Source: Octopus bimaculoides (Eukaryota). From it: a stretch of DNA of 37,375 nt. The notes under the pieces were generated by a model that searched no databases, was not told the origin of the DNA, and saw only the letters and a program-made list of their open reading frames with translations. Positions within the stretch are counted from its first letter, which is position 1; every line of letters starts with the position of its first letter. The translations under genes were made by a program, and so were the position numbers. The stretch lies in NCBI RefSeq assembly GCF_001194135.2, contig NC_068993.1:46469903-46507277 (forward strand). The letters run 5' to 3'. This document shows positions 3,365 through 37,375 of the stretch, one piece after another.

Positions 3365-3410
3365 CGCGTGTGCGTGTGCGTGCGTGTGCGTGTGCGTGCG
3401 NNNNNNNNNN

Positions 3411-9033: not shown

Positions 9034-9169
9034 CTGCATATATAATCGAGTTTATCTCTTAACTCATTAATATTAGAGAATTCCGTAAAGAAAGCTTTGC
9101 ATTCCAAATAGTTGACTTTTGCCTCAAGTAAGCAACCATGGCATATTGGTATACACAGAAGAAATGTAA
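9034..9169 (-). CDS. Host gene exon 2 (TFLLCIPICHGCLLEAKVNYLECKAFFTEFSNINELRDKLDYIC)
   Basis: Acceptor cattttgcatttcag|, donor AG|GTAAGT, 136 nt, open frame. Ends in phase 2 (AG+T=Ser), matching exon 3. Confidence 0.85.
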
Positions 9170-9214
9170 CTGAAATGCAAAATGTTTAAACGATTAATCA
9201 AAGTATCCTCACCT

Positions 9215-9590
<376 letters not shown>

Positions 9591-9621
9591 ACACTAATAC
9601 ATTAATATATATACATATTCG

Positions 9622-9742: not shown

Positions 9743-10149
9743 ACCTTTTTCTTTAACATTATTATTCTTATTATTATTGAGTGAGTGTGAGAACGATGCA
9801 TGTCATCAAAGGGACATTCGGGTACAAATATACGAAGCCCAATATATCCATCATGACTACCTGTCTGATAAGGGTACACCAGGCACATGCCTCACAACCA
9901 TATGTGGGCGATATGGTGCCCTCATATCATGATAAACAGCGCATGACCTTGCAGGTGGGGCCCAGTTAGAATTTTCTTCAGGTCGAGTAGCCCATCCCGC
10001 TCAACAGGTCCCTGAGTGAAGGTTGCTTAAGGATGATGAATGAAATACCTACGTTTCCAAAGGTGAATTATCCAAACCCAAAAGAATTTCTCTCAACACA
10101 TGTTTATGATGTTTCCCCTCTACTCTTGCTTGTGATCAGAGATGCACAT

Positions 10150-12620: not shown

Positions 12621-13399
12621 ATATCTTTTAAGCTGGTTCTCATGCATTTCCCTGAAGAGAAGATTACATTCTTATCAACATCTTATCTACACCTATTCCT
12701 ATGGAAAGTATAATTTGTAATCTTCGAAACATATGTTGGAAATAAAAGTGTTCAGTTAAAATATGCGTTTTACTCCATTTACTNNNNNNNNNNNNNNNNN
12801 NNNNNNNNNNNNNNNNNNNNNNNNNNNNNNNNNNNNNNNATATATATATATATATATATATATAGAAAGAATTTGTTCTTTCTTAGTGATATATTATCCA
12901 AGCGTACTCAAGTTTCGCACTAACACAATTAACGATACTGGAAATTTTTCATTTTCTAGTGTTTATTGTTGGATCTTCTTCAATATAAGTACTTCGTACT
13001 TCTGAAAATACAGTTGTCGCTATGGAGATTTCCATTATCATTATTTTCGAGTAAATAAAACTGAATTATTAAATAACCAAAGTGGCGAGAAAATCAATGA
13101 TAATATGACTTACACGATAAACGAAGTAAGGAAAATAAATCTAAGAGACTCCCCGATAGGATCTAAACATATAAACATACAATCTATAAAAAGTAGAAGC
13201 AATATGCATAATATTAACAACAAAATTGATAATATATAACTATTAATAATATGAATATAAATACTAATACTAACAATAGCAGAAAGAAACATAAAAAAGA
13301 AACAATAAATGTGTTAGAATAGGCAAAGAAAATAATGACATAGTAGATAATAATGCAAGCAGTAAACAAAGTAACATGAATAATTTTAGGTTAATGATA

Positions 13400-13900
13400 A
13401 AGACTCATGACAGAAAATTAATAATAAGGAGGTTAACTATGAAGGCGTAGAATGCAAGCACAACATTATTAGTAAGCAAGAAGGGTGCGCTACTAAAAAT
13501 ATAACTTGCGATTGCGCTAAAGGTAAACAGTGTCCATTAAATTCTTTTTTGTGGGGAAAAAAGGAGTACATGAATGTAAGGTTGTATCTGTGAGACAGGA
13601 TTGCTAATGTAGGTTCAGCGGAAAGTTATATAGAAAGAATGATATCTAATCAGGAAAATACCTTCAGGGATAGAAAAAAAGAGGCTAGCACGAGTCTAAG
13701 TATACTAATTTGGTCGATTAAGGATAAAAATGAAGATTATATACTTACGTAGGAAACAATTAGCCGAGCAAAATCTTATAGATATGGGAACAAAAGATGC
13801 GAACATTGAATCAAAGGAAGTTACCAGATTCTCACGTCTAACATCAAAACGCAAATTAATCGACAAGAGGAAAGAGGAACCTATGTGTTCATGAAGTTAA
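13400..13900 (+). mobile_element. Penelope-like element, GIY-YIG endonuclease fragment
   Basis: TCDCAKGKQCPLN ... NVGSAESYIERMISNQENTF ... STSLSILIWSIKDKNEDYILT*ETISRAKSYRYGNKRCEH* ... INRQEE, matching the PLE C-terminal pattern. Confidence 0.75.
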
Positions 13901-14157
13901 ATATACATTTAATAAATTTAAGTAGATATGGTTAAAATAAACACAGTGTAAATAAAACCTATGAATCATGCATCTATACTATAAATTAAATAGACTGAAA
14001 TATATATGTATGAATCCAACTTATCAACTAATATATTTCAATAGATAATTATATTTACTAGTAACTAATATAAATTTTGCAGCGTGGAAGGTGTTTATAA
14101 GCCATTTAAAAATACACAAAAACCGCTAGATTCACTTCAACATTTAAATTTAATTTG

Positions 14158-14202
14158 TCAAAATATTTTCGTCGCTTTGAGACCGCGACCTGTTCACTGA
14201 CC
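14158..14202 (-). ncRNA. Minimal type I hammerhead-ribozyme-like motif, G3-C8 core variant
   Basis: GTCA GTGAACA G GTCGC ggtctcaaa GCGAC GAAA ATAT TT TGAC: stem I, core, 5-bp stem II, GAAA, palindromic stem III. Confidence 0.55.
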
Positions 14203-14228
14203 AAATTCCGTGCTGCATCTGAGAAATA

Positions 14229-14307
14229 TGGAAGAAGTGCCTATTATAAACCAGTGAACAAGTGTCGATGGAAGAAGAAGTGCCTTTACTATAAACCAGT
14301 GAACAAG
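14229..14307 (+). repeat. Imperfect ~40-bp tandem duplication, each unit with TATAAA (candidate viral VP promoter)
   Basis: tggaagaagtgcctattataaaccagtgaacaag / tggaagaagaagtgcctttactataaaccagtgaacaag. TATAAA at 14245 and 14290, upstream of ATG 14364. The duplication is seen directly; the promoter role is inferred. Confidence 0.6.
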
Positions 14308-14363
14308 GCAATAGCGTTCTTTTTAATATTTAAATGTCTCCGATACGGACGCCTAAGAAAGAA

Positions 14364-15513
14364 ATGGAAAACTAAGAAAATCCAGAGGAATTAATTTGCG
14401 AAAACATCATCGAATTTCATCCACCAGGATACAGATTCCTGGGGCCAGGGACAAACATATTTTCAAAATTAAACGTAGATCCAACAAACGAACACCACAG
14501 AGCAGCAAAACTACATGATCTCCACTACGCAGACCCCAACAAGGATAGTTGGGAAGCTGATAAAGAATTCATCGACAGTGCTATTAGGACAGGACCACGT
14601 GGAACACTCGCGGCGGGGGCCATTGCAGCTAAACACGCTCTCGGACTCGATAAGGTCTTCAGACCGGACCACTGAGACTATTATCGCAGTTTGTTTCCTT
14701 CTAATAGCAATAATCAAAATATGGCGGATAAAACAGAGGGAGACGCATCAACAAACGAAAGTGAGCCTTCTCACGCTACAACACACATCCAATCAGGGTC
14801 CATGTTCCCAGGCGGAGAAACAGGTAACTTCGCGAGAAGATTCACAATCAGCAGAACATACCGAAATGTTATAAAATCATGCGACATGAACAACGCGAAA
14901 GTAAAGTTCACTAAGTTCCAAGGGAACGAATCAGGAAACCATAACGTGGGGTACTTCGCAAAAGGTGAAGTAACAGCGGAAGACTACTTAATACCATACT
15001 GGTTGACAACATGGATAAAACCATCACAATGGGAAGTCATGATGCAAATGGCAACATCCTACAGAATAGAGAAACAAGGCGTCAAAATTGACGATATCAT
15101 ATGTGGAGAGTGGACAAGCAGAAACAACGAGGAAATATTCGTAGATTCACCAACTCCATACTTTGAAATATACATAGACAAAAGAAATTACATCGGCTTC
15201 GGTTATCTCACTACGATAAGCAAAATACCCAACATTGGTTTTACAATACCACACCCAAACACATTCACAAGTATGGAACTACCGAAATACAAATATACAT
15301 ACTGCGCGCCAGTACACCTAGTTAACCAATTGGCTACAACACAAATTGAAGACTAAGTTAGCAACACCACTAATAAGCTACTGGAGAAACATGAAATCAA
15401 AAAGAAAACTAAGACAAGGAGACACTTTCCAACACGTATGGCAAATCAAATCCAGACTACAAATACCACTCACTAACCACACTATTCAAGGGAACTATAC
15501 AGTACACGTTTAA
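14364..15513 (+). pseudogene. Endogenous parvovirus/densovirus-like VP1/VP2 capsid gene (EVE), disrupted
   Basis: One frame from ATG 14364: MEN*ENPEELICENIIEFHPPGYRFLGPGTN...AAKLHDLHYADPNKDSWEADKEF... This is the parvoviral PLA2 Ca-loop YxGPG (here FLGPG), the HDxxY catalytic motif and AD..F. After TGA 14673 the same frame continues into MADK... (ATG 14721) with capsid-like RRFTISRTYR and IPYWLTTWIKPSQW. After a frameshift near 15350 comes KLRQGDTFQHVW, similar to the parvoviral LRTG(D/N)xF motif; stop at 15511-15513. Confidence 0.9.
14515..14874 (+). CDS. Intact 119-aa ORF overlapping VP1u/VP2 N-terminus in the +1 frame, with one predicted TM helix (candidate viral accessory protein)
   Basis: ATG within the HD codons of the PLA2 motif, no stop for 119 codons, hydrophobic TIIAVCFLLIAIIKIW followed by basic RIKQR. 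Confidence 0.45.
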   Translation: MISTTQTPTRIVGKLIKNSSTVLLGQDHVEHSRRGPLQLNTLSDSIRSSDRTTETIIAVCFLLIAIIKIWRIKQRETHQQTKVSLLTLQHTSNQGPCSQAEKQVTSREDSQSAEHTEML

Positions 15514-15879
15514 TTTTGAAATAATAGCAATCTACCGAAACGCAGCGACAGCAATATGAATGAATTTATTAATTTGACTGGACTATGTTAATAAATTGAT
15601 TACTCTATATATGTATTCTCAGTTTTATTTGAATTTTGAAACCTTTTTATCCTATAAATATGATAAAGACCCCATTTGATCGCGAATTACCATGGGATTG
15701 CAGCTATAATGTTCCAAACAAGGTTATTTGTAGAAGACCAGCAGTTGCCCATGCATACCCACCAATCTTCTCTCTCCACACCTTCGACTTTGTACAAGGG
15801 AAAGGCAAAGGCCAGCACCACCTGGAACCAGTGACATCGGAACCCATTTCTACTGCTGAGTGAATTGGAGCAACGTGAA

Positions 15880-15980
15880 ATAGAATGTCTGGTTCGGGAG
15901 CCTAACACACAGCGCGGTTCAGGAATTGAACTCACAATCTCATGACTATAAGCCCGATGGTCTAACGATTTCGCCATGAT
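15880..15980 (-). mobile_element. tRNA-derived SINE head at the right edge of the EVE
   Basis: Minus strand tggcgaaatcgttagaccatcgggcttatagtcatgagattgtgagttcaattcc with A/B-box-like elements. Confidence 0.55.
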
Positions 15981-16151
15981 CCTTCACATACACACACCCA
16001 CTAACACTCATACACACACTATATTTGAAAGTTACAATACATAATCAACGTTCAATCTACTGGTTAGGCAAGTACAATATTTAATGGTATTTCTAGTTGT
16101 GATATACACAGTAAATGTAGGAGAAATTGCGATAAACACGAGCTTATATCA

Positions 16152-16205
16152 TTTGTACCTACGTACGTTTCATCCAAGAGCAAAAACTGGATGCTTAACC
16201 ACAAA
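16152..16205 (-). ncRNA. Decayed hammerhead-like motif
   Basis: tttgtgg ttaagc ATCCA gtttttgctct TGGAT GAAA CGTACG TA ggtacaaa: stem II, GAAA, palindromic stem III and GUA triplet intact; CUGANGA box damaged. Confidence 0.4.
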
Positions 16206-16388
16206 GGATTTCCAGGGAACATTTTATTGCATTGTATTACCGAGGACTAATATCTGACGTTAAAGCATCTCATAAATATTTAGTGAGGGAAGTAGTTTTT
16301 ACAATAAACTTTTGTTTATTGTTATTTCTCTCTTTCTTTCTCTCTCCCTCAGTCTCACTCTCTCGCTTTCTTCCTTTCTCTCTCTCTA

Positions 16389-16451
<63 letters not shown>

Positions 16452-17017
16452 NNNNNNNNNNNNNNNNNNNNNNNNNNNNNNNNNNNNNNNNNNNNNNNNN
16501 NNNNNNNNNNNNNNNNNNNNNNNNNNNNNNNNNNNNNNNNNNNNNNNNNNNNNNNNNNNNNNNNNNNNNNNNNNNNNNNNNNNNNNNNNNNNNNNNNNNN
16601 NNNNNNNNNNNNNNNNNNNNNNNNNNNNNNNNNNNNNNNNNNNNNNNNNNNNNNNNNNNNNNNNNNNNNNNNNNNNNNNNNNNNNNNNNNNNNNNNNNNN
16701 NNNNNNNNNNNNNNNNNNNNNNNNNNNNNNNNNNNNNNNNNNNNNNNNNNNNNNNNNNNNNNNNNNNNNNNNNNNNNNNNNNNNNNNNNNNNNNNNNNNN
16801 NNNNNNNNNNNNNNNNNNNTATATATATGTTGCAAAAAGAAACTAGAAACTACACGTCGAAATGTAAGCCGAAAGTAAGAAGTAAAATAAGCGAAAATGC
16901 ACATTAGAAATCAAAAAAAGTAAAGGCTTTCTACGAAAAGTAACGATAGATATATACAATTAAAGTATATATAAAAAGGAGATAGATATATACAATTAAA
17001 GTATATATGCATAAAAA

Positions 17018-17207: not shown

Positions 17208-17699
17208 ACCTCTAAGTTAGATAAATTCTGGTTTTACCTAATCTAGCTTTGGTACCAACACACAATTTCCTACCCTAACCTCAACTCACTCTTATTCTTT
17301 CTCCTGCCCCTTCTTTCTACCTCTTTTTCAACATTCTTCATACTCTCTCCTCTTTCCTCCTTCTCCCCGTATTTCTATTATTTTGTTTCCACTAAGTTCC
17401 TTCCAGTGAAAGTAAGTGGCATAGTGGTTAGTGTGTTCGGCTCAAGGCCATAATGCCAAGGGTTCAGTTCCTGGAACGGCGACTCATCGTTTCATATTAC
17501 ATCAGTTAACTCACCTCCAAATTGGTTCCAGTCGAATACTGGTGCTGCTTTCTCTCTCTGCAAATGTCATAATCTGAATGTGCCGTTGGGTCAAAGGGTG
17601 GTAGAATTGGCTGGCATCTTTGCCAGGTTACGACTATAGAAGCACCGAAAGCAATAAGCGATAACATGGTATACTTTACCACAAAAAAGCCCTAATTAT

Positions 17700-18300
17700 T
17701 CTGTCATATCCTATTTCTAGTTTTTACACCTTATAAAACCATCCTCAGGATAGGCCCATTCAACCTCACCAGTCATGCCATTCTGATCTTCCATCCGTTA
17801 AACATACTGCAAGATTGTTCCTCCCTCTCTACTCTCACCTTCACGTTCAAGCGGTACATGGAGTTAATGAGAGATTGGCCAGAGGGAAAAACATTTCAGA
17901 TTGGTCCATCACACAATATCTTATGCAAACGTTACCAAGTAAAAAAAGACCTGTTTCCCTTCCATACGAAAGGAAAGTGGTGCGAGTAGGTATCTTTGCT
18001 GTAGGCACAGCGGACAGCCTAATTCATTATACGCACGACAGAAGTCATTCGACACAAATCCACAAGTCTCTACTGAACAATGGGGCTAGGGACAGTTTCG
18101 TGTTCCTACATGTATCTCAGAAAGGTCTGGCTGTTGACATTTACCTGGCTATAGAGATTGTCTCGAACATGCCGTGCCATGCTGTAGCACTGTCATACTA
18201 ATGACTTGAGGAAGTTGTCTATAATCTCCGACCTGAAAGTCCTCCATAGACACTGGTTAGTCTGTTCTCCTCTATGGCCAGAGTTTATTCCAGGTCACTC
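17700..18300 (-). mobile_element. 3' portion of a Tx1/L1-like LINE, decayed
   Basis: Minus frames give FKSLV*QCYSMARHVRDNLY...HETV..., EGKQVFF, V*WTNLK and SGQSLIN...KVRVERE, resembling L1/Tx1 ORF2 C-termini. Confidence 0.55.
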
Positions 18301-18329
18301 TGGAATAAACCACTACGCTATATGCCCAC

Positions 18330-18403
18330 GGGCATATGGCGTAGTGGTTCAGAGCGCGGGCTACTAACTCCAAGATTCCGAGTTCGATTCCATGCAGTGA
18401 CCT
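18330..18403 (+). mobile_element. tRNA-derived SINE head followed directly by (TAA)n
   Basis: A box TGGCGTAGTGG, B box GAGTTCGATTCC; acceptor stem does not pair well, so not called as a tRNA. Confidence 0.6.
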
Positions 18404-18417
18404 TAATAATAATAATG

Positions 18418-18448
<31 letters not shown>

Positions 18449-18449
18449 G

Positions 18450-18970
18450 TGATAATAAAGCTAATGAACCGGATATTATTATAAAAGATAAGACAAAGAA
18501 GATGTGTTTATTAATTGACATGAGTATTCCTTGCGATCATAATATAGCTGCGAAAGAATTTGATAAGATCAGTAAATATAAAGACTTGCTAATAGAAATT
18601 GAAAAAATGTGGCATCTCAAAGCGACTACCGTACCAGTGATTGTAGGATTTCTAGGAAGGATAAAAAAAAAAGGAACTGAAACCTATTTGAAAATGATAC
18701 CAGGCTTACCATCCCTACAGGAAGTGCAAGACATCGTGTTAACTGGAACGACTCATATACTGAGAAGAGCATTATCGCTGTGAAAACAACATCCATTCTT
18801 GAATTTGTTTATTTATTAATTTTTTTTTAATGCATATTTTACCTGTGAATTTGCGTGTGTAAACTGGGAATACATACAATGAGCTTCTCTGCCCTAGGTG
18901 TACGGAAAACACTCCACGAGATATGGAAGAAAATTTGAAGAAAGAAGAAAAAAACAACATAATAATAATA
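18450..18970 (+). mobile_element. Short 3' fragment of an RLE-type LINE; endonuclease C-terminus still in frame
   Basis: KANEPDIIIKDKTKKMCLLIDMSIP...KYKDL..EIEKMW...VPVIVGFLG...LRRALSL*. Preceded by (TAA)n; the 3' UTR ends in taataataata. Confidence 0.88.
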
Positions 18971-19066: not shown

Positions 19067-19583
19067 AACAACAAAGAGGATGAGAACAAATATCCGTCAA
19101 ATGTAAATAACGTACAGGAAAGTAATCTCTCCTACTTGGTCAAGTGTTTCTTGAGAAAAGGTAAGGCAGCCAAGTGATCAAGGTAGTACACCTTCAGGAG
19201 AACCACTTCGCCCTTCCCTACCAGTAATGCTCTATAAATGTCTAAAGCGGAACATATTGTTTTCTTAATTGGACACGAGAGCCGAACGCGAAACAAAAAG
19301 GGACAATACAACACATGGGACAAGTGGGGCTTAAAACAAAACTTCATGTATGAAATTAAAACAAGAACAATTAATAACAAAAATTCGACAATGAAATTTC
19401 CCAAAGTGGGGGGAGAGTCCACCCAGGGATAACCCCACACATCCTGGCTACCCCGACCGCCAGGGGTACCTCAGTAGGTGCTTCCCTCCTTCTCAACTTC
19501 CCCGGCTTACAATCAGAGTGGGCTCATTATTGTGGGCCATCTTTGCTACATTCACCCCAACTTCAACAAAATTATATATATAT

Positions 19584-19631
<48 letters not shown>

Positions 19632-19639
19632 ACATATGC

Positions 19640-19800
19640 GACGGCATGGCTAAGCGGTAAGAAGTTTGCCTCCCAGTTATATGATTCCGGGTTCAGGCCC
19701 ATTGCGTAGCACCTTGAGCAAGTGTCTTCTCTTCTGCTACAACCTCAGGCCAACCAAAGCCTTATGAGTAGATTTAGTAGAAAGAAACTTACAGAAACCC
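19640..19800 (+). mobile_element. SINE family 1, 5' half
   Basis: Same consensus. Confidence 0.8.
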
Positions 19801-22409
19801 GTCTTGTGTATGTGTGTGTGTGTGTGTGTTTATGTGCGTGTGTGTGTGTTTATGTGCGTGCGTGTGGGCGTGTGTGTGGGCGTGTGTGTGCGCAAGTGTG
19901 TGTGTGTGTGTATTTGTATATGTTTGTGCTTAAGTGAGGGAGCTACTAGGTGCAAGTTTTTTTCCTTCAGATGGATTTAAATACTTCTCAGGATTTACGT
20001 AACACTAACAATGTGACAAAGCCTTTTTATTCAAAATCATTGAACGCCATTAAATCGCCCCCGTGCTTTTTACATTATACAGGAGCAGCCTTTTAAAAGA
20101 TTCAAGATATGACCTTTTCACACCACCTATTTATAATTCGTATGTCAAACTTGCATTTTGCAAATGTATGTATTATTTTTATTGGGTATTGAATTCTCAC
20201 AAATCTTGTTTAGGTTCTAACATGATAGATAGATAGATATGTAGTGTATGTATACCTTTCTTTTTGTGTTTGAAGTAACGTGCTTGTGATATTGACAATA
20301 TTTGATAAAACTTGTTCTAAGCGTGATTTTTTTCTCAAAACTGCTATTGTAATAGGTTTAAAAGACCAAATGACCGGACGAGGGAAGATTGTAATGGGGA
20401 GTGTGAGGTAAGGAAGAGAAAAATTACAGGATGCAAAGAAAGGGTAAGAGAAAAAAAAGAAAGAGAAAAAGAAGAGGAAAAGGAGGAACTGAGAGGAGTG
20501 TTAGGGAAATGGCCTCAAGAACTGTTGTCTGAGAAGTTATTTCAGAAATATGTGTCTTGGAAGAGGTTAAGGACAAACAACGTGATTGATAATTCATGTG
20601 GCGACATTTTATAAGGATTGAATTGAAAGGCGTCGAGGGAAAGTTATGTTGATGACGTCGTCAGAACGCCATTGTGTTACTTCTGTGTGCATTGTGTTAC
20701 TTGAGGAAAGGAGAATATGTCGGTTAATGATGTTTTTCCAGCCTGCTTTTCCTTTCAATTCCTTTTTCTCTCATTTTTCCTTACTTTTTCCCTCAACTTA
20801 TATTTCCTCATTCGCTGTGTGTTGTTGATTTCTCTGTCTTGCGCTAATTTTCTTTCAATTCGATTTCTTTTAACGCATCATTCTAATAATGTGCAGCAGG
20901 ATTGAATGCTCCGTTATACACTTTATATACTATTTACTTTATATACTAATATTCTTTATATACTAATATTCTTCTGCTAATGTTATGTACCGATAGAACT
21001 AATCAGTATTTAAGTCTTGCATTGTAACTGACAATATATGACCCTTCCCTAGCTCTGAGGTTAGTTGATTTATCTACCCTTAACATATTGACAGTTTTCT
21101 TTTTTCTATCTTTTAATATTTCTAAGTTAGGGTGTTCATGTAACAGGAAATTACCAATTCATAGTTTACAGTTATAAGTAGTAGTTTATGAGCAAAAATA
21201 GAAGACAAAACGAGAAGAATTAGTTTTAAGAACGATGGTATATATGCGTACACACACACATACACACACACACATACATATATGTATGTATGTATGTATA
21301 TACATACATGCATGCAGATAGACAGACAAGCATATAACCAGAGAGATTTTAGTGAGACTCACATCATTTGCAATCTGTCTGAAACGTCGAACTTCCCACA
21401 CGCTACGGCTTCAAGCTCACTGTATTCTTTTCGTCAATTTTATTGCGCGCGCGCGTGTGTGTACGAGCGATATCAAATTTAAATAGCACGTTAATAAATA
21501 CTTAGAGGTTCATTTGTATTTCTGTATGCCTGAAGGGAAACTGTAGGCTGGATTTGTATCATCTTGTAGGATATATCACAGAAAACACATCTGAAGAGAT
21601 TGCTTGAAAAAGCAATTTCATTAAGTAATTCACGTATTATAACGGATAAACATTCTGTGTTAATGAAATACGCGTAAAGTGATGCAACTAAATATTTTAT
21701 AAACAATCTCTCTAAATGTACGTATGTCTGCATACATGTATGTATGCATGAGCATGCGTCTCCTTTTCTTGAATTCCTGTGATACTTGTAAACGAGCATC
21801 ACTGTTAAGCAAGCGGTGTCCTTCGCTTCCAATATTCAATGAAATCATGTCTAGCCATGGATAGATGTTACTTTACTTGAAAACAGATCACAGTTGGCGA
21901 CATGAAGGGCATCCGGCAACAGAAAATCCGCTTCAGCGAATTCTGTCCGACTCATGCGTGTATGGAAGAGTGGCAATTAAAACGACAACGACGAGGAGTG
22001 GGAAGGAGGTGGAGGCATATTATGATGACGTTAATACTATATTTGTAAAATATCTATTAGATATTAATTAGATACTGTTATACTTCTAACTGCGTTAAAA
22101 AGTGAAATATGATAGAGGTACGACACAAAAGGAAAGGGACCAGTATATGTAAGAATGAGTATAGAAAGAGAATGAAAGATAAACAGAAATGAATGATTAG
22201 GATAAAAGAGGAGAGTGTTACTCTCAGCTATGTTTATATATACTAGTTAAAATGAAATTGTGTACCACGCTTCAGCGCCACTGCTTACTTATATCGATCT
22301 CTACTGGTATTTTATTTTGACAATTAAGTATTTCCATTTTATATCTGCAGACATTTTCACTTATATATAAACATTCATACATGTACATGGTTGTACATCT
22401 GAATTCTGA

Positions 22410-22519: not shown

Positions 22520-25248
22520 TAAACATGTGTATATGTAGTATGTATGCATGTGTATACCTATGATCTATGGTGGAAAAGTAGAATCCAGGCAGGGTTAGAC
22601 ATGCTCTCGAAGGAAATCTCTGTGTTAGACCGAAAAGAGAAAGGGGAGCTTAAAAGCGAACAAAAGTACAGGGTGCTGAAAAGGAAGTACAATATTGAAA
22701 GAAAGGACCTGAAAGTAGGAGTGGAGTGACTGAAATAGCGCCACGTTGCAAAGAAAGCAAAGATGGTAAGATACGACCAAAGAATGAAGGGTTACCACCA
22801 GAATAGGTTATTCAGAGTAGATCAAAAGAGATTCTATAAAGAAATAAATGCAGAGTGTACAGATGAAAAGTTGATATCAGATAACATTGAAAGTCAAAGG
22901 TTTTGGAGTGACATCTGGAGAAAAGACAATGAGCACAAGAAGGATGCTGAATGGTTGCAAGAACTGAAACAAACAGTAGTCTGTTCAAAACAAGCAGAAC
23001 TAGCCATTTCAGTTAGAGAAGTGAAGGAAATCAGCAAAAAAATGAGCAACTGGAAGGCCCCGAGACCAGATGGAGTTCAAGGCTACTGGATCAAAAGATT
23101 TGGTGAATGTCATGCACGAATAGCTGCGCAACTCAACACCTTGTTAAATGCCGACCAACTAACACCAGAGTGGTTGACATTGGGTAGGACAGTGCTGTGC
23201 CTGAAAAACATCGAAACAGGCAATACTGTAGACAATTACAGACCGATATCCTGCTTGCCACTTATGTGGAAGTTATTGACTGGAATACTCGCAGAGTCAA
23301 TGTACGAACATCTGGAAAAAATGGAGTCCTGCCACATGAACAGAAGGGTTGCAAGCGTAATTATAGAGGTAACAAGGATCAACTCCTGATAGAGAAAACT
23401 GTNNNNNNNNNNNNNNNNNNNNNNNNNNNNNNNNNNNNNNNNNNNNNNNNNNNNNNNNNNNNNNNNNNNNNNNNNNNNNNNNNNNNNNNNNNNNNNNNNN
23501 NNNNNNNNNNNNNNNNNNNNNNNNNNNNNNNNNNNNNNNNNNNNNNNNNNNNNNNNNNNNNNNNNNNNNNNNNNNNNNNNNNNNNNNNNNNNNNNNNNNN
23601 NNNNNNNNNNNNNNNNNNNNNNNNNNNTTTGTACTGTGCTTGATAGCACTAACACTGATTCTTAGGAAAGCAAAAGCTGGGTGTGTATTCAAAAGCCACC
23701 AACAAAAAGTCAACTATTTGTTATTCATGGATGATCTCAAACTTTATGGTAAAGATGAAGCCTAAGTCAGTTCTCTCGTGGATACGATGTATAGCTTCAG
23801 TGCTGATATCAGAATGGAGTTCGGATTGAGAAAGTGTGGTGTGTTAGTCCTGAAGAGAAGTAAAATCAAATGTACGGACGGGCTAATGATACCGTCGGGG
23901 GAAGTTATGAAGCAGATAGAAAAGACGGAATTTAAGTACTTGGTGATTTTGGAAATGGATACATTGATGGAGAAAGAAATGATAGAAAAATTTAAGTTAG
24001 AGTACTTGTACAGACTGAGACTGATCCTTAAGTCGAAATTAAACGGACGGAATAAGATCGAAGCTATCAACACCTGGGCGGTTTCACTCCTTAGATATGG
24101 AGCAGGGGTAATCACATGGACAGTAGACGAACTAAACAGCTTAGACAGAATGACAAGGAAGTTGCTAACTAGATATGGGCCACTCCACCCAAAAAATGAC
24201 ACAGACGGACTGTATGTACCAAGAAAAAGAGGGGGAAGATGATTTATTGGATGGGAACACAGCATAAGAGCAGAAGACAACAATATAGCATGGTATGTAA
24301 AAAATGCCACAGAACCGCTATTATTAGAAGCAAGACGGTCAGGCTTGTGTAGTATGAAAGATTGCAAAGATAAAGCATTATACAAGAAATTGAAAACTAA
24401 TGAAACTGAAAATGGGTGGGTAAAGAAAAAAATGCATGGTCAATTTCATAGGGATGTTGAAGATAAGACAGACAGAAAAAAAAGATGGCCGTGGATGACT
24501 AAAAATGATTTAAAACCGGAAATGGAGGCTCTAATCTGTGCTCTCCAAGAGCAAGCACTAAGGATACACTACATAAAATACAGAATAGACAGCACATCGG
24601 AAAGTGATAAGTGCAGAATCTGTGGACAAAACGGTGAAACCGTATGGCATATTACCAGCCAATGTACTCCACTAGCCCAGAAGGAATATAAGAGACTCCA
24701 CGACAATATAGCCAAGGTTGTCCATTGGACACTTTGCAACAACTATGGACTTCACATAGCAAAAAATTGGTTCGATCACAAACCTGAAGGCATCGTTGAA
24801 AATAGAAATGCAAAGATCCTATGGGATTTTATGATTCAGTGCTACCTATAGGAAGCCGGACATAGTCTTAATTGAGAAAGAAAACAAACTATGCCGCGTC
24901 ATAGATATAGCAGTCCCAGCTAACAACAAGGTATGCGATAAGGCAGAAAGAAAAATTGCGATATATGACAGGTTAGCTTGGGAAGTTAAGCAGTTGTGGT
25001 TGGTGAAATAGGTAGCAGTAGTACCAATAATTGTCGGAGCCCTGGGAACAGTGAGCTAAAATCTCGAGAAGTACGTGGAACAAATAGTCGTTGTAATAAG
25101 GGTGGATCACTTGCAGAAAACAACACTGCTTGGAACCGCTCGAATACTCCGGAAGGTGCTCGAAAAATAAGAAGCGTTACCTTAGTTCACTGGTAGTGAA
25201 CAGCTGACACCGTAGTACATATCCAGCGTTAAAGGCTGTGCAAAGGCA
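22520..25248 (+). mobile_element. Long RLE-type (R4/Dong-like) LINE, pseudogenised, interrupted by an assembly gap
   Basis: WKAPRPDGVQGYWIK, NYRPISCLPLMWKLLTG, EQKGCKR..RGNKDQLLI, LLFMDDLKLYG (RT), CRICGQ..ETVWHITSQC, HDNIAKVVHW, KPDIVL..VIDIAVP. (TAA)n tail at about 25250-25337. Confidence 0.92.
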
Positions 25249-25639: not shown

Positions 25640-27597
25640 TTCTATGTGGTGAAAGGATTAGAAAACGACAACATTCCCACAGAAAGCCAACACCAAATTC
25701 AGCTACTTAGGACTGGCATAGAATATTTTAAAAACCCTAAGTTTGACAAGACTACCAAATCAACAAAAATCCGAATATTAAAGAAAAAATATATGAAAAC
25801 CACATTTGACATCAATACCATCATAGAAACTATCAAGCAAAAGGTATGTGCTAAAGCTACCCGCATAGCAAGGTATGAAAACTACGTTAGATACTCCAAG
25901 GACAACAGCATGTTCAAAAATAACCCCAAAAGTTTTTGCAGGAAGATAGGAAAAATACCAAAATGTCTACTGCATCAAAAGAAGAAATACATGAATTGTG
26001 GAATAAAATTTGGGCAGAAGAAAAAACACACAATCAAAGAGACCCTTGGATTGATAGAATATCTACAGACTTAGACTCCTTAGAAAAGCAAAAGTGGGAG
26101 GGTATCAAGGTAGATGATGTAAGATCTGCTCTCAGGAAGTCAAGCAAATGGAAGTCTCCAGGGAAGGATAAAATTCCTAACTTCTGGTTGAATACCTTCC
26201 TAGAGAGCCATGAACTGCTAACAAAACTTAACAACAATGGTTTGCAACAACCTAGTATGATTCCCACTTAGCTAGTTAATGGTATAACATTCCGACTTCC
26301 AAAACATGAAGAAACAAATAAACCAAAAAATTATAGACCCATAACCAGCTTAACAACAATGTATAAAATACTAACATCTGTCTTCACTGGATATACCTAT
26401 AGTTTTTTATGGAAAATGGCATATTCCCTAATGAGCAAAAAGGATGTAAACGTGAGTCCTATGGTTGTAAAGATGAGCTGCTCATCAATAAGGTGGTCTT
26501 GGAAGATTGTCACAAACGACCCAAAAAGTTGTCGATTGCCTGGATAGACTATAAAAAGTTTTTGATAGTCTACCACACATCTGGATTAAGAAACGTCTGA
26601 AAATGTATACAATAGCACCCACTCTGCAGAACTTCTTGTCTGCAAGTATGAGATCATGGAGAATCACACAGACTTTGAAGAGTGACAATGAATCTCTTAA
26701 TGCTTGAGATGTAAGAATTTTATGTGGCATTTTCCAGAGTGACTCTCTATCACCACTCTTCTTTTGTATAGCCTTAATGCCTCTCTAAATTACTCAATGA
26801 TGTACAATACGGTTATAAAATGTTTGATAAAAAAATATAAATCATCTCATTTACATGGATGATTTAAAGCTCCTTGCAAGAAGTGACCAAGAGTTACAAG
26901 GTTTACTAGCGACTGTGAAACAATTCAATGGTGACATCAGGATGCAATTTGGCCTCGATAAATATGCAAAGGCTACTTTTATCGAAATAAAAATGACAGA
27001 AACATCTGCAGTTAATCTTGACCAGCAGTATATCATAAAGGAGTTAGAACCAGCGGAGAGCTACAAATACCTAAGGGTATTTGAAGGGGACGGAATCAAA
27101 CATTCAGTGATGAGGGAAACGATCAGAAGAGAATGTTATCGCAGGGCAAGGGTAATACTTAGGACAGAGTTGAATGCAAGAAACAGGATCGAAGCGATCA
27201 ATATTTTAGCCATACTGGTCGTAACTTACTGTTTCAATATCATTAACTGGTCAATTATTGAAATATGTAATCTTGACAGAAAATACGAAAATTGTAGATA
27301 ATGTATAGAATGCATTATCGAGAGGGTGGCCGTGGACTTTTACAACTGGAATTAACAATGAACATTGCCACAATTGGCCTAGACACCTACCAGAAATACT
27401 CTGATGACTGGGTGTTAAAATTTGTCTCAAAACATGAAAACAAGAAAGCATCATACTCAGTAACAAAACAGGCAAAGGAATATCTAAGTAAATTCCAGAT
27501 ACAACAAATTCCAGAATCAGACGTACTAGAAACAAGCACAGACAAAGCTAAACGTATGAAAACCCGTGCTAAAACTGCTGCCTTAGAGTTTCTTTGA
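25640..27597 (+). mobile_element. Second, distinct RLE-type LINE family; RT region, 3' truncated and pseudogenised
   Basis: KWKSPGKDKIPNFWLN, NYRPITSLTTMYKILTS, EQKGCKRESYGCKDELLINK, HLIYMDDLKLLARS, ELNARNRIEAIN; many frameshifts. Confidence 0.9.
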
Positions 27598-36568: not shown

Positions 36569-37044
36569 ATTTATTTATTTATGTGTTTCAGCCAAGTGGC
36601 TGCGGTCATGCTGGTGCACCATGACCTCTGCAGCTTAAATAAATAAATACAGGAAATATTAAATAATATGGGTCAATATACTCACACACTACCACAATAT
36701 ACTCACACACTACCACACACCTGCATGAACCGACACACATCCCACACTCTCTCCCTCTCAAGCACGCACGTACACACATGTAACCCACACAGACGCACAC
36801 AAACGAACGCACACACACGCGAACGCACATATACCTCTACACACACAACCCTCCAAACACCCATACACATGTGTGCTCACACACACATACACACTTCTAT
36901 TTTTAGTTTTTCACATACCCAAATGCACATACACACACATACTAGTGTGCAGGTACAGATAAAGCTCATGTCCTTGGCCATACAAACGCACCCACATACG
37001 CTCCCTCACACGTACATACACAAACACACACGCACTGTCATACC

Positions 37045-37084
37045 GGCCATGACGAAGGGAAATAGCCCTGAAACTCGAGTCGCC
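37045..37084 (+). ncRNA. Minimal hammerhead-like motif (one extra A in core)
   Basis: GGC C(A)TGACGA AGGG aaatag CCCT GAAA CTCGAG TC GCC: palindromic stem III and GUC triplet. Confidence 0.55.
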
Positions 37085-37375
37085 TTTATATATATATATT
37101 TATATTTATATATTTATATATTTGATCCTTTATATTGAACACTCAATATTTCATCTACATTCAATACTTTCTTTCATGGTGCCATCCATTTTTATTTTAT
37201 TTTATTTTATATTATATATTGTATATTATATTATATGTTGTATATTCCATATTCTATACCCCACATTAGTTCTGCAGGAATATAAATAAAACATAAAAAA
37301 CAGACAGTGTTGGAACTCTTTTAAGCAAAATAATATATTCCTCTATACACAATCATACAAAAAAATCCACCTTTT

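What the first reader, a model, noticed from the sequence alone, without database searches (positions are those of the whole stretch)
14364..15513. Endogenous parvovirus/densovirus capsid gene (PLA2 + jelly-roll) in a probable cephalopod genome
Seen: HPPGYRFLGPGTN...HDLHY...WEADKEF, a Ser/Asn/Gly linker, a second in-frame ATG (14721), then RRFTISRTYR, IPYWLTTWIKPSQW and, after a frameshift, KLRQGDTFQHVW. The PLA2 part is missed by the ORF track because of TAA at codon 4. Established: this PLA2-then-capsid order with these motifs defines Parvoviridae VP1/VP2; Hamaparvovirinae lack PLA2. Inference: a germline fossil of a divergent, possibly mollusc-infecting parvovirus lineage. Its few lesions suggest a relatively recent insertion.
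Basis: partly seen in the sequence, partly recalled or inferred. Interest (0 to 1): 0.9.

Follow-up and report, generated by a model that had tools for sequence, protein, structure and literature searches.

The report
Truncated parvovirus capsid gene fossil
A broken, half-length copy of a parvovirus coat-protein gene lies among host repeats in what looks like an octopus genome; such viral fossils are common in animals, but this one belongs to a very divergent, undescribed lineage whose intact relatives carry their two genes in an unusual order.

Summary
Window 14334-15507 (+) is a pseudogenised, 3'-truncated VP1 gene of a parvovirus-like element. Its N-terminal domain passes Pfam's threshold for the parvoviral phospholipase A2 domain (PF08398, 36.4 bits against 23.9), and both catalytic motifs are intact. 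The downstream part matches no Pfam capsid family. It is linked to parvoviral capsids indirectly: profile-profile comparison to intermediate sequences (HHalign 95.7%, E 9e-9), which in turn hit solved parvovirus capsids. An AlphaFold model of an intact relative has only parvovirus capsids as its top 50 Foldseek matches in both libraries.

The copy carries 2-3 premature stops and 1-2 frameshifts. It lacks about 38% of VP and has no NS1. It sits in a gap-free block with a repeat 89% identical to Octopus vulgaris chromosomal DNA. The claim of a recent insertion is not supported.

Relatives include a degraded O. vulgaris chromosomal copy and intact contigs of about 4-4.5 kb evolving under strong purifying selection. 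All that carry both genes have VP before NS1 on one strand, an order I did not find described.

Octopus parvovirus-related sequences were reported in 2016, so this is a new member of a known kind. Interest is moderate.

The parts
14334..15507 (+). Pseudogenised, 3'-truncated VP1 gene of a parvovirus-like element (one part, first to last base). It corresponds to positions ~1-377 of the ~606-621-residue VP of intact relatives. It carries 2-3 premature stops and 1 (at most 2) frameshift(s). The C-terminal ~38% is missing.
   Evidence: frameshift-aware alignment to P0004, P0152, P0153 and P0154: 45-48% identity, counts only; family HMM positions 10-377 of 608.
14412..14576 (+). Parvoviral phospholipase A2 domain (VP1 unique region). 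The calcium-loop motif (YRFLGPG) and catalytic HDLHY are intact.
   Evidence: PF08398, 36.4 bits (cut-off 23.9), E 6.4e-9, residues 13-67 of the fragment; aligns to the N-termini of solved parvovirus VP1 chains 9cuz and 4g0r.
14721..14723 (+). In-frame ATG after the PLA2 domain and Ser/Asn-rich linker. A Met lies at or next to this position (MAD/MGD/MD context) in the relatives, so this is the probable VP2 start of the source virus (inference).
   Evidence: Alignments; sequences.
14826..15507 (+). N-terminal half of the capsid jelly-roll domain. The best-conserved core is 14826-15188.
   Evidence: HHalign of the octopus-family capsid-only profile against intermediates, 95.7%, E 9.4e-9, window ORF residues 46-166; profiles hit PLA2-less solved parvovirus capsid chains; the model of relative P0153 matches only parvovirus capsids.
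14242..14307 (+). Two 21-nt direct repeats (14242-14262 and 14287-14307), each containing TATAAA. The second lies ~45 nt before the VP ATG. This may be a remnant of the viral VP promoter (inference).
   Evidence: family D4, 95% identity; the O. vulgaris copy has TATAAATA ~40 nt before its ATG.
14077..14218 (.). Neighbour: one terminal inverted repeat plus the core of a MITE-like host repeat, abutting the VP upstream region. It marks the 5' limit of the virus-derived DNA, which therefore lies between 14219 and 14333.
   Evidence: 88.8% identity over 143 nt to O. vulgaris chromosome locus L001 7816-7958; the L001 copy has 46-nt terminal inverted repeats. The element is absent from intact contigs.
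15506..15521 (.). Second arm of a perfect 16-nt inverted repeat (first arm 14461-14476, inside the PLA2 domain), lying exactly where VP homology ends. It may be a rearrangement junction.
   Evidence: I3, 100% complementary; 0 of 100 shuffles give two matches.

Best explanation
Window 14334-15507 is an endogenous viral element. It is a dead, partial copy of the VP1 capsid gene of a parvovirus-like virus that entered the germline of an octopus-like cephalopod.

In the source virus (inferred from family knowledge):
- The N-terminal PLA2 domain served endosomal escape.
- A conserved internal Met started the shorter major capsid protein.
- The jelly-roll domain built a T=1 capsid.
- A neighbouring NS1 (nickase plus SF3 helicase) replicated the genome.

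In the window (shown):
- Only the first ~62% of VP survives.
- It is interrupted by 2-3 stops and 1-2 frameshifts.
- There is no NS1 and there are no terminal hairpins.
- Host repeats flank it.

It therefore most likely has no protein-coding function and decays neutrally (inference). The truncation may have arisen at a fold-back or template-switch junction marked by a 16-nt inverted repeat (inference).
For: - PLA2 domain: PF08398 above the curated cut-off, with motifs aligned to solved VP1 N-termini.
- Capsid part, step 1: family profile against intermediates, HHalign 95.7%, E 9.4e-9. Capsid-only HMM scores against PLA2-trimmed intermediates are 18-23 bits.
- Capsid part, step 2: intermediates hit solved parvoviral capsids that lack PLA2 (9nek E 1e-14, 9n5l 1.4e-8, 3p0s 1e-4). 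The mixed profile A4 also hits AAV, bocavirus and bufavirus VP2/VP3 chains.
- Structure: the AF2 model of intact relative P0153 (41% identical to the window ORF; pLDDT 66.7, core 80-96) has Foldseek top-50 hits that are all parvovirus capsids in PDB (E 5e-11 to 2e-9) and in BFVD (best 9e-19).
- NS1 link: relatives carry Parvo_NS1 next to VP.
- Endogenous state: lesion counts; only VP positions 10-377 of 608 present and no NS1.
- Host context: a gap-free block 12840-16451 contains a repeat 89% identical to the O. vulgaris chromosome. A degraded homologue lies in O. vulgaris chromosome record OX597831.1.
Against: - No Pfam capsid family matches the window ORF or any close relative.
- Profiles built only from the octopus family reach solved structures through PLA2 alone, so the capsid homology is transitive.
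- The structural evidence comes from a relative, not from the window sequence itself.
- Host species, read support and orthologous loci could not be checked.
- The assembly has gaps nearby, at 12784-12839 and 16452-16819.
Confidence: 0.88

Rival explanations
1. The fragment is one decayed copy of a multi-copy parvovirus-like lineage that is still circulating in, or repeatedly entering, octopod genomes. Its genome order is permuted (VP before NS1 on one strand). On this reading the interesting object is the lineage, not this fossil.
For: - Four independent intact contigs of 3.8-4.5 kb carry full VP (606-621 aa) followed by NS1 (517-565 aa) on the same strand, with spacers of 37-160 nt.
- The same order is seen in the degraded O. 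vulgaris chromosomal copy and in L002, and in a distant PLA2-less lineage, L011.
- pN is 0.11-0.25 against pS 0.69-0.82 between intact copies, which means strong purifying selection.
- There is no head-to-tail redundancy that would indicate tandem or circular artefacts.
- The exhaustive search found 203 clusters, many of them short fragments, some on contigs of 77-87 kb.
Against: - The window holds neither NS1 nor the spacer, so it says nothing about gene order.
- The origin of the Logan runs is unknown.
- No telomeres were found, so none of the contigs is shown to be a complete genome.
- More distant PLA2-VP relatives are ambisense.
- My literature search was limited to open-access text.
Confidence: 0.5
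2. The segment is exogenous viral or contaminant DNA joined to host sequence by misassembly, not a germline insertion.
For: - The assembly is a gapped draft with eight N runs in 37 kb.
- The nearest gaps lie about 1.5 kb upstream and 0.9 kb downstream of the fragment.
Against: - The gene is truncated and carries stops and frameshift(s), which is not expected of a replicating virus.
- It is contiguous, without N, with a repeat 89% identical to the O. vulgaris chromosome only 116 nt upstream.
- A homologous degraded copy sits inside an 84-Mb O. vulgaris chromosome record.
Confidence: 0.04
3. It is a host gene: either a cellular secreted PLA2, or a co-opted (domesticated) viral gene still serving the host.
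For: - The PLA2 catalytic motifs are intact in the window copy.
- O. vulgaris annotation calls its copy a predicted protein.
Against: - The best Pfam family is the viral PF08398. Cellular PLA2 families score only sub-threshold, and only in distant relatives.
- The reading frame is broken several times and truncated.
- No gene with this product is on record.
- The O. vulgaris copy has lost the catalytic His.
Confidence: 0.04

Closest known systems
Endogenous parvoviral elements (EPVs, or parvovirus-related sequences) in animal genomes, including those listed for Octopus bimaculoides by Francois et al. 2016 (PMC5013282)
   Same: - Virus-derived parvoviral coding sequence fixed in host DNA, fragmentary, with stops and frameshifts.
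- That paper already noted mollusc sequences that resembled vertebrate parvoviruses more than densoviruses and branched outside known genera. This fits my Foldseek ranking, where Parvovirinae VP1s come first.
   Different: - The O. bimaculoides entries I could read are a short WGS match and an NS1-like helicase protein, not a PLA2-VP gene.
- Whether they belong to the same lineage was not tested.
VP1 of Parvovirinae and Densovirinae (PLA2-bearing capsid proteins, such as the AAV, bocavirus, bufavirus and Bombyx densovirus capsids in the PDB)
   Same: - N-terminal PLA2 domain, a low-complexity linker, an internal start for the major capsid protein, then a jelly-roll core.
- The conserved block around IPYW...W-E...SYR aligns to the corresponding block of solved AAV-type capsids.
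   Different: - Only 10-15% identity in structural alignments.
- No Pfam capsid family is matched.
- VP of relatives is about 610 aa.
- The linked NS1 lies downstream of VP on the same strand, not upstream or on the opposite strand.
Ambisense densovirus-like contigs L009 and L010 (PLA2-VP of 624-644 aa facing an NS1 of 682-716 aa)
   Same: PLA2-bearing VP of similar length plus a Parvo_NS1 gene on a 4.8-5.0 kb contig. They match the family profile.
   Different: - Gene orientation is ambisense.
- The capsid region is only weakly similar to the octopus family.
PLA2-less parvoviruses (Hamaparvovirinae and the newer invertebrate subfamilies named in PMC13426907)
   Same: Parvoviridae of aquatic invertebrates that leave EVEs in host genomes (PMC11357303).
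   Different: The window copy has one, so it is not of that kind.

Membership tests
Parvoviridae VP1 (capsid protein with VP1-unique PLA2) | PLA2 domain with a calcium-binding loop (Y-x-G-x-G) and a catalytic H-D-x-x-Y | tested here: met
   PF08398, 36.4 bits against a cut-off of 23.9. YRFLGPG and HDLHY align to solved VP1 N-termini.
Parvoviridae VP1 (capsid protein with VP1-unique PLA2) | Jelly-roll capsid domain homologous to parvoviral VP | tested here: met
   Met indirectly. HHalign of the family against intermediates gives 95.7%, E 9.4e-9. The intermediates and the mixed profile hit PLA2-less solved capsids. The model of a relative gives only parvovirus capsids. Direct tests failed: no Pfam capsid hit, and family-only profiles do not reach PDB capsids.
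Parvoviridae (genome level) | NS1 with an SF3 helicase (and HUH nickase) in the same element | tested here: not met
   Not met in the window: there is no NS1 remnant. Met in relatives: Parvo_NS1 at 53 bits (cut-off 20), with AAV Rep40/68 as the nearest solved helicase. The HUH nickase motifs were not tested.
Parvoviridae (genome level) | Terminal palindromic hairpins | tested here: not met
   No terminal inverted repeats flank the fragment or lie in the intact contigs. Hairpins are commonly lost from EVEs and from short-read contigs, so this says little.
Parvoviridae (genome level) | Canonical gene arrangement: NS upstream of VP on one strand, or ambisense | tested here: not met
   This cannot be read in the window, which has VP only. 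In all relatives with both genes the order is VP then NS1 on one strand.
Endogenous viral element | Virus-derived sequence physically contiguous with host DNA | tested here: met
   A gap-free block 12840-16451 contains the fragment and a repeat 89% identical to the O. vulgaris chromosome.
Endogenous viral element | Loss of coding integrity | tested here: met
   There are 2-3 stops, 1-2 frameshifts and a 3' truncation of ~38%.
Endogenous viral element | Vertical inheritance: the same insertion at the orthologous locus of related species, or an empty site in outgroups | not testable with these tools
   No cephalopod genome collection is searchable here. The O. vulgaris copy (L001) is a different, non-orthologous insertion with 49% protein identity and different flanks.
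Densovirinae versus Parvovirinae versus other subfamilies | Placement by NS1 SF3-helicase phylogeny | not tested
   The tools gave no named NS1 relatives: all hits are unnamed Logan proteins. Structural ranking puts Parvovirinae VP1s first, but that is not a phylogeny.

The most novel reading that the evidence does not exclude
The fossil belongs to an undescribed clade of PLA2-bearing parvovirus-like viruses of octopods (and perhaps other molluscs). Its genome order is permuted, with VP upstream of NS1 on the same strand and a 37-160 nt spacer. Intact members evolve under strong purifying selection and may still be infectious or recently endogenised. If so, cephalopod genomes hold a record of a lineage that falls outside the current arrangement rules of Parvoviridae.
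Probability: 0.45. Interest if true: 0.7.

Novelty: new member of a known kind. Interest (0 to 1): 0.5.

Why it matters
- Taken alone, the window feature is one more parvoviral fossil. It adds a VP/PLA2-type element to the few records from cephalopods.
- It gives a handle (a family profile) on a lineage that standard Pfam capsid models miss.
- Its relatives matter more. They show that a very divergent PLA2-bearing parvovirus-like lineage is associated with octopus genomes, that some members are intact and selectively constrained, and that all of them have VP before NS1.
- If that order is confirmed on complete genomes, it would extend the known range of parvoviral genome organisation. It would also bear on the old observation that mollusc parvovirus-like sequences sit nearer to vertebrate parvoviruses than to densoviruses.

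Tried and rejected
- **Pfam and PHROGs on the capsid ORF and on relatives' capsid parts:** no capsid family. There were only sub-threshold hints in distant relatives: IHHNV_capsid at E 0.0097 and Parvo_coat at E 0.032.
- **phmmer of the window ORF against PDB:** nothing meaningful.
- **Octopus-family-only profiles against PDB:** PLA2-only hits or none.
- **First AlphaFold run with a 15-sequence alignment:** pLDDT 38.6, unusable outside the PLA2 domain.
- **NS1 or the missing VP C-terminus elsewhere in the window:** one marginal tblastn hit at 17668-17865 (E 0.032) was not supported by the family HMM and was rejected.
- **Terminal hairpins or ITRs around the fragment and in intact contigs:** none.
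- **Palindromic element upstream (14077-14218) as a possible viral telomere:** rejected. It is 89% identical between loci whose VP genes are only ~49% identical in protein, and it is absent from intact contigs. It is taken as a host MITE-like repeat.
- **Tandem or circular explanation of the VP-then-NS1 order:** no head-tail overlap, and the spacers are too short to hold two telomeres.
- **Downstream segment 15520-16010 as a repeated SINE:** no blastn match elsewhere, so the claim was dropped.
- **Host species:** the ORF is not on record, cluster look-ups gave no names, and the run accessions appear in no paper.
- **tRNA and Rfam scans of the window:** nothing.
- **Literature on cephalopod parvoviral EVEs or on the VP-before-NS order:** only Francois et al. 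2016 mentions O. bimaculoides.

Full report
**1. Observation**

The PLA2-like segment and the 221-codon ORF lie in one reading frame, and a single tblastn match from relatives covers both. The KLRQGDTFQHVW segment lies in another frame.

The encoded MSPIR... matches the MPPIR... N-termini of relatives. Homology ends at about 15504-15507. There is a single copy in the window.

**2. What the two domains are**

The N-terminal fragment passes Pfam's curated threshold for PF08398, the parvoviral phospholipase A2-like domain (36.4 bits against 23.9, E 6.4e-9). Its YRFLGPG and HDLHY motifs align with the N-termini of solved parvovirus VP1 chains.

The downstream ORF has no Pfam, PHROG or direct PDB match. 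The same is true of the capsid parts of its relatives. Profiles made only from the octopus family reach solved structures through PLA2 alone.

The capsid assignment therefore rests on three indirect lines:
- **Profile to intermediates.** An exhaustive profile search found 203 clusters. Among them are intermediate PLA2-VP proteins (P0049, P0070, P0083, P0101, P0115). A PLA2-free profile of the octopus family, with the window ORF as first row, matches their alignment. HHalign gives 95.7%, E 9.4e-9, over window ORF residues 46-166. HMMER capsid-only scores are 18-23 bits.
- **Intermediates to solved capsids.** The intermediates, and a mixed profile, hit solved parvoviral capsid chains that contain no PLA2: 9nek E 1e-14, 9n5l 1e-8 to 1e-7, bocavirus and bufavirus VP2, AAV VP3, and 3p0s.
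- **Predicted structure.** An AlphaFold2 model was made of the intact relative P0153, which is 41% identical to the window ORF over 95% of it. With a 60-sequence alignment it reached pLDDT 66.7 and pTM 0.59, with a core at 80-96. Foldseek returned parvovirus capsids as all 50 top matches in the PDB (E 5e-11 to 2e-9, probability 1.00). It returned Parvoviridae proteins, almost all annotated as capsid or structural proteins, as all 50 top matches in BFVD (best E 9e-19). TM-scores are modest (0.3-0.5) because long loops are poorly modelled.

**3. State of the copy**

A frameshift-aware alignment to four intact relatives gives 45-48% identity. It covers their residues ~5-14 to ~374-392 of 606-621. 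It contains 1-2 stops and 1 (in one case 2) frameshift(s). One more stop lies upstream of the aligned part. The totals are 2-3 premature stops, 1-2 frameshifts and loss of about 38% of VP at the 3' end.

Family HMMs for VP and NS1, run against the six-frame translation, find only VP positions 10-377 of 608 and no NS1. In an intact relative, 4.85% of point substitutions create stops. The stop count therefore suggests, very roughly, a few percent of neutral change. No relative closer than about 50% protein identity exists in the databases searched. The age is thus unconstrained, and 'recent' is not supported.

**4. Context**

The fragment lies in a gap-free block, 12840-16451. The segment 14077-14218, which ends 116 nt before the ATG, is 88.8% identical to part of a palindromic MITE-like element on Octopus vulgaris chromosome record OX597831.1. 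Several other window repeats match that locus at 74-89%. The window is AT-rich, full of microsatellites and retrotransposon-like ORF fragments, and has eight N runs. This supports an octopod-like host and a true integration. The species could not be identified.

Between the host repeat and the ATG lie two 21-nt direct repeats containing TATAAA. The O. vulgaris copy also has a TATA-like box about 40 nt before its ATG. Exactly at the 3' end of homology sits a perfect 16-nt inverted copy of a PLA2-domain sequence, which none of 100 shuffles reproduced. I read this as a possible fold-back or template-switch junction, but it remains unexplained.

**5. Relatives and gene order**

The nearest proteins are unnamed Logan or ENA sequences and one O. 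vulgaris 'hypothetical protein'.

| Locus | Length (nt) | VP | NS1 |
|---|---|---|---|
| L004 | 4078 | 606 aa | downstream, same strand |
| L005 | 4409 | 621 aa | 530 aa, downstream, same strand |
| L006 / L007 | 3807 / 3791 | 611 aa | 565 / 559 aa, runs off the contig end |
| L012 | 4470 | 608 aa | 517 aa, downstream, same strand |

- Spacers between VP and NS1 are 37-160 nt.
- The downstream gene scores 53 bits against Parvo_NS1 (cut-off 20). Its nearest solved structure is the AAV Rep40/68 helicase.
- The same order is visible in the degraded O. vulgaris chromosomal copy and in L002. It is also seen in a distant PLA2-less lineage, L011.
- Two more distant PLA2-VP contigs are ambisense.
- The intact contigs show no head-to-tail redundancy and no terminal hairpins. 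Their similarity is confined to the coding regions.
- Between them pN is 0.11-0.25 and pS is 0.69-0.82, which means strong purifying selection on both genes.
- I found no description of a VP-then-NS1 order in the searchable literature. From my own knowledge, the canonical arrangements are NS-then-VP or ambisense.

The window itself cannot speak to gene order.

**6. Comparison with what is known**

Parvoviral EVEs are widespread. Francois et al. 2016 (PMC5013282) already list O. bimaculoides among species with parvovirus-related sequences. They also note mollusc sequences nearer to vertebrate parvoviruses that branch outside known genera. The current taxonomy has six subfamilies (PMC13426907). 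Subfamily placement was not possible because no named NS1 relatives were returned.

**7. Verdict**

The finding is real, and its core interpretation is right: it is an endogenous parvovirus-type VP1 remnant in an octopus-like genome. It is a truncated, multiply broken fragment with no evidence of youth or function. It is a new member of a known kind and of moderate interest. The more novel lead lies outside the window: the lineage's VP-then-NS1 order and its intact, constrained members.

**Housekeeping**

One early notebook entry contains an approximate coordinate of a frame change. A later entry asks readers to disregard it, because only counts are reported here.

Noticed in passing
Loci L004, L005, L006/L007, L008, L012, L001 (10001-12686), L002 and L011: Every relative that carries both genes has VP upstream of NS1 on the same strand, with a 37-160 nt spacer (the two genes overlap in L011). 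This differs from the canonical NS-then-VP or ambisense parvoviral layouts. Intact copies are under strong purifying selection.
   Followed up: partly
window 14461-14476 and 15506-15521: A perfect 16-nt inverted repeat. One arm is in the PLA2 domain and the other lies exactly where VP homology stops. None of 100 shuffles reproduced it. It may be a rearrangement junction.
   Followed up: partly
window 14077-14218; L001 7771-7958: A MITE-like palindromic repeat with 46-nt terminal inverted repeats in O. vulgaris. One arm plus the core is present in the window at 89% identity, truncated where the virus-derived DNA begins.
   Followed up: partly
window 14242-14262 and 14287-14307; L001 about 9955-9970: TATAAA-containing 21-nt direct repeats about 45 nt upstream of the VP ATG. 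A TATA-like box sits at a similar distance in the O. vulgaris copy. This may be a retained viral promoter.
   Followed up: no
window 22763-24851, 26855-27301 and 18274-18783: ORF fragments that look like non-LTR retrotransposon reverse-transcriptase and zinc-finger tails (only a weak zf-RVT Pfam hit). The 18274-18783 tail is shared with the O. vulgaris locus at 74% identity.
   Followed up: partly
L001 11872-12297 (minus strand): In the O. vulgaris chromosomal copy, a retrotransposon-like ORF lies between the end of VP and the NS1 remnant, so that copy was split by a later insertion.
   Followed up: no
P0002 (O. vulgaris annotated protein, L001 10001-10807): The O. vulgaris genome annotation calls a 268-aa 'hypothetical protein' that is really the first part of a degraded viral VP gene. 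Its PLA2 catalytic His is replaced (ALDIDY).
   Followed up: no
window 9130-9600, 16320-16451, 19560-19990 and 36600-37100: Long CT/GA and CA/TG microsatellites. Two of the eight assembly gaps (at 3401-3410 and 16452-16819) directly abut such repeats.
   Followed up: no
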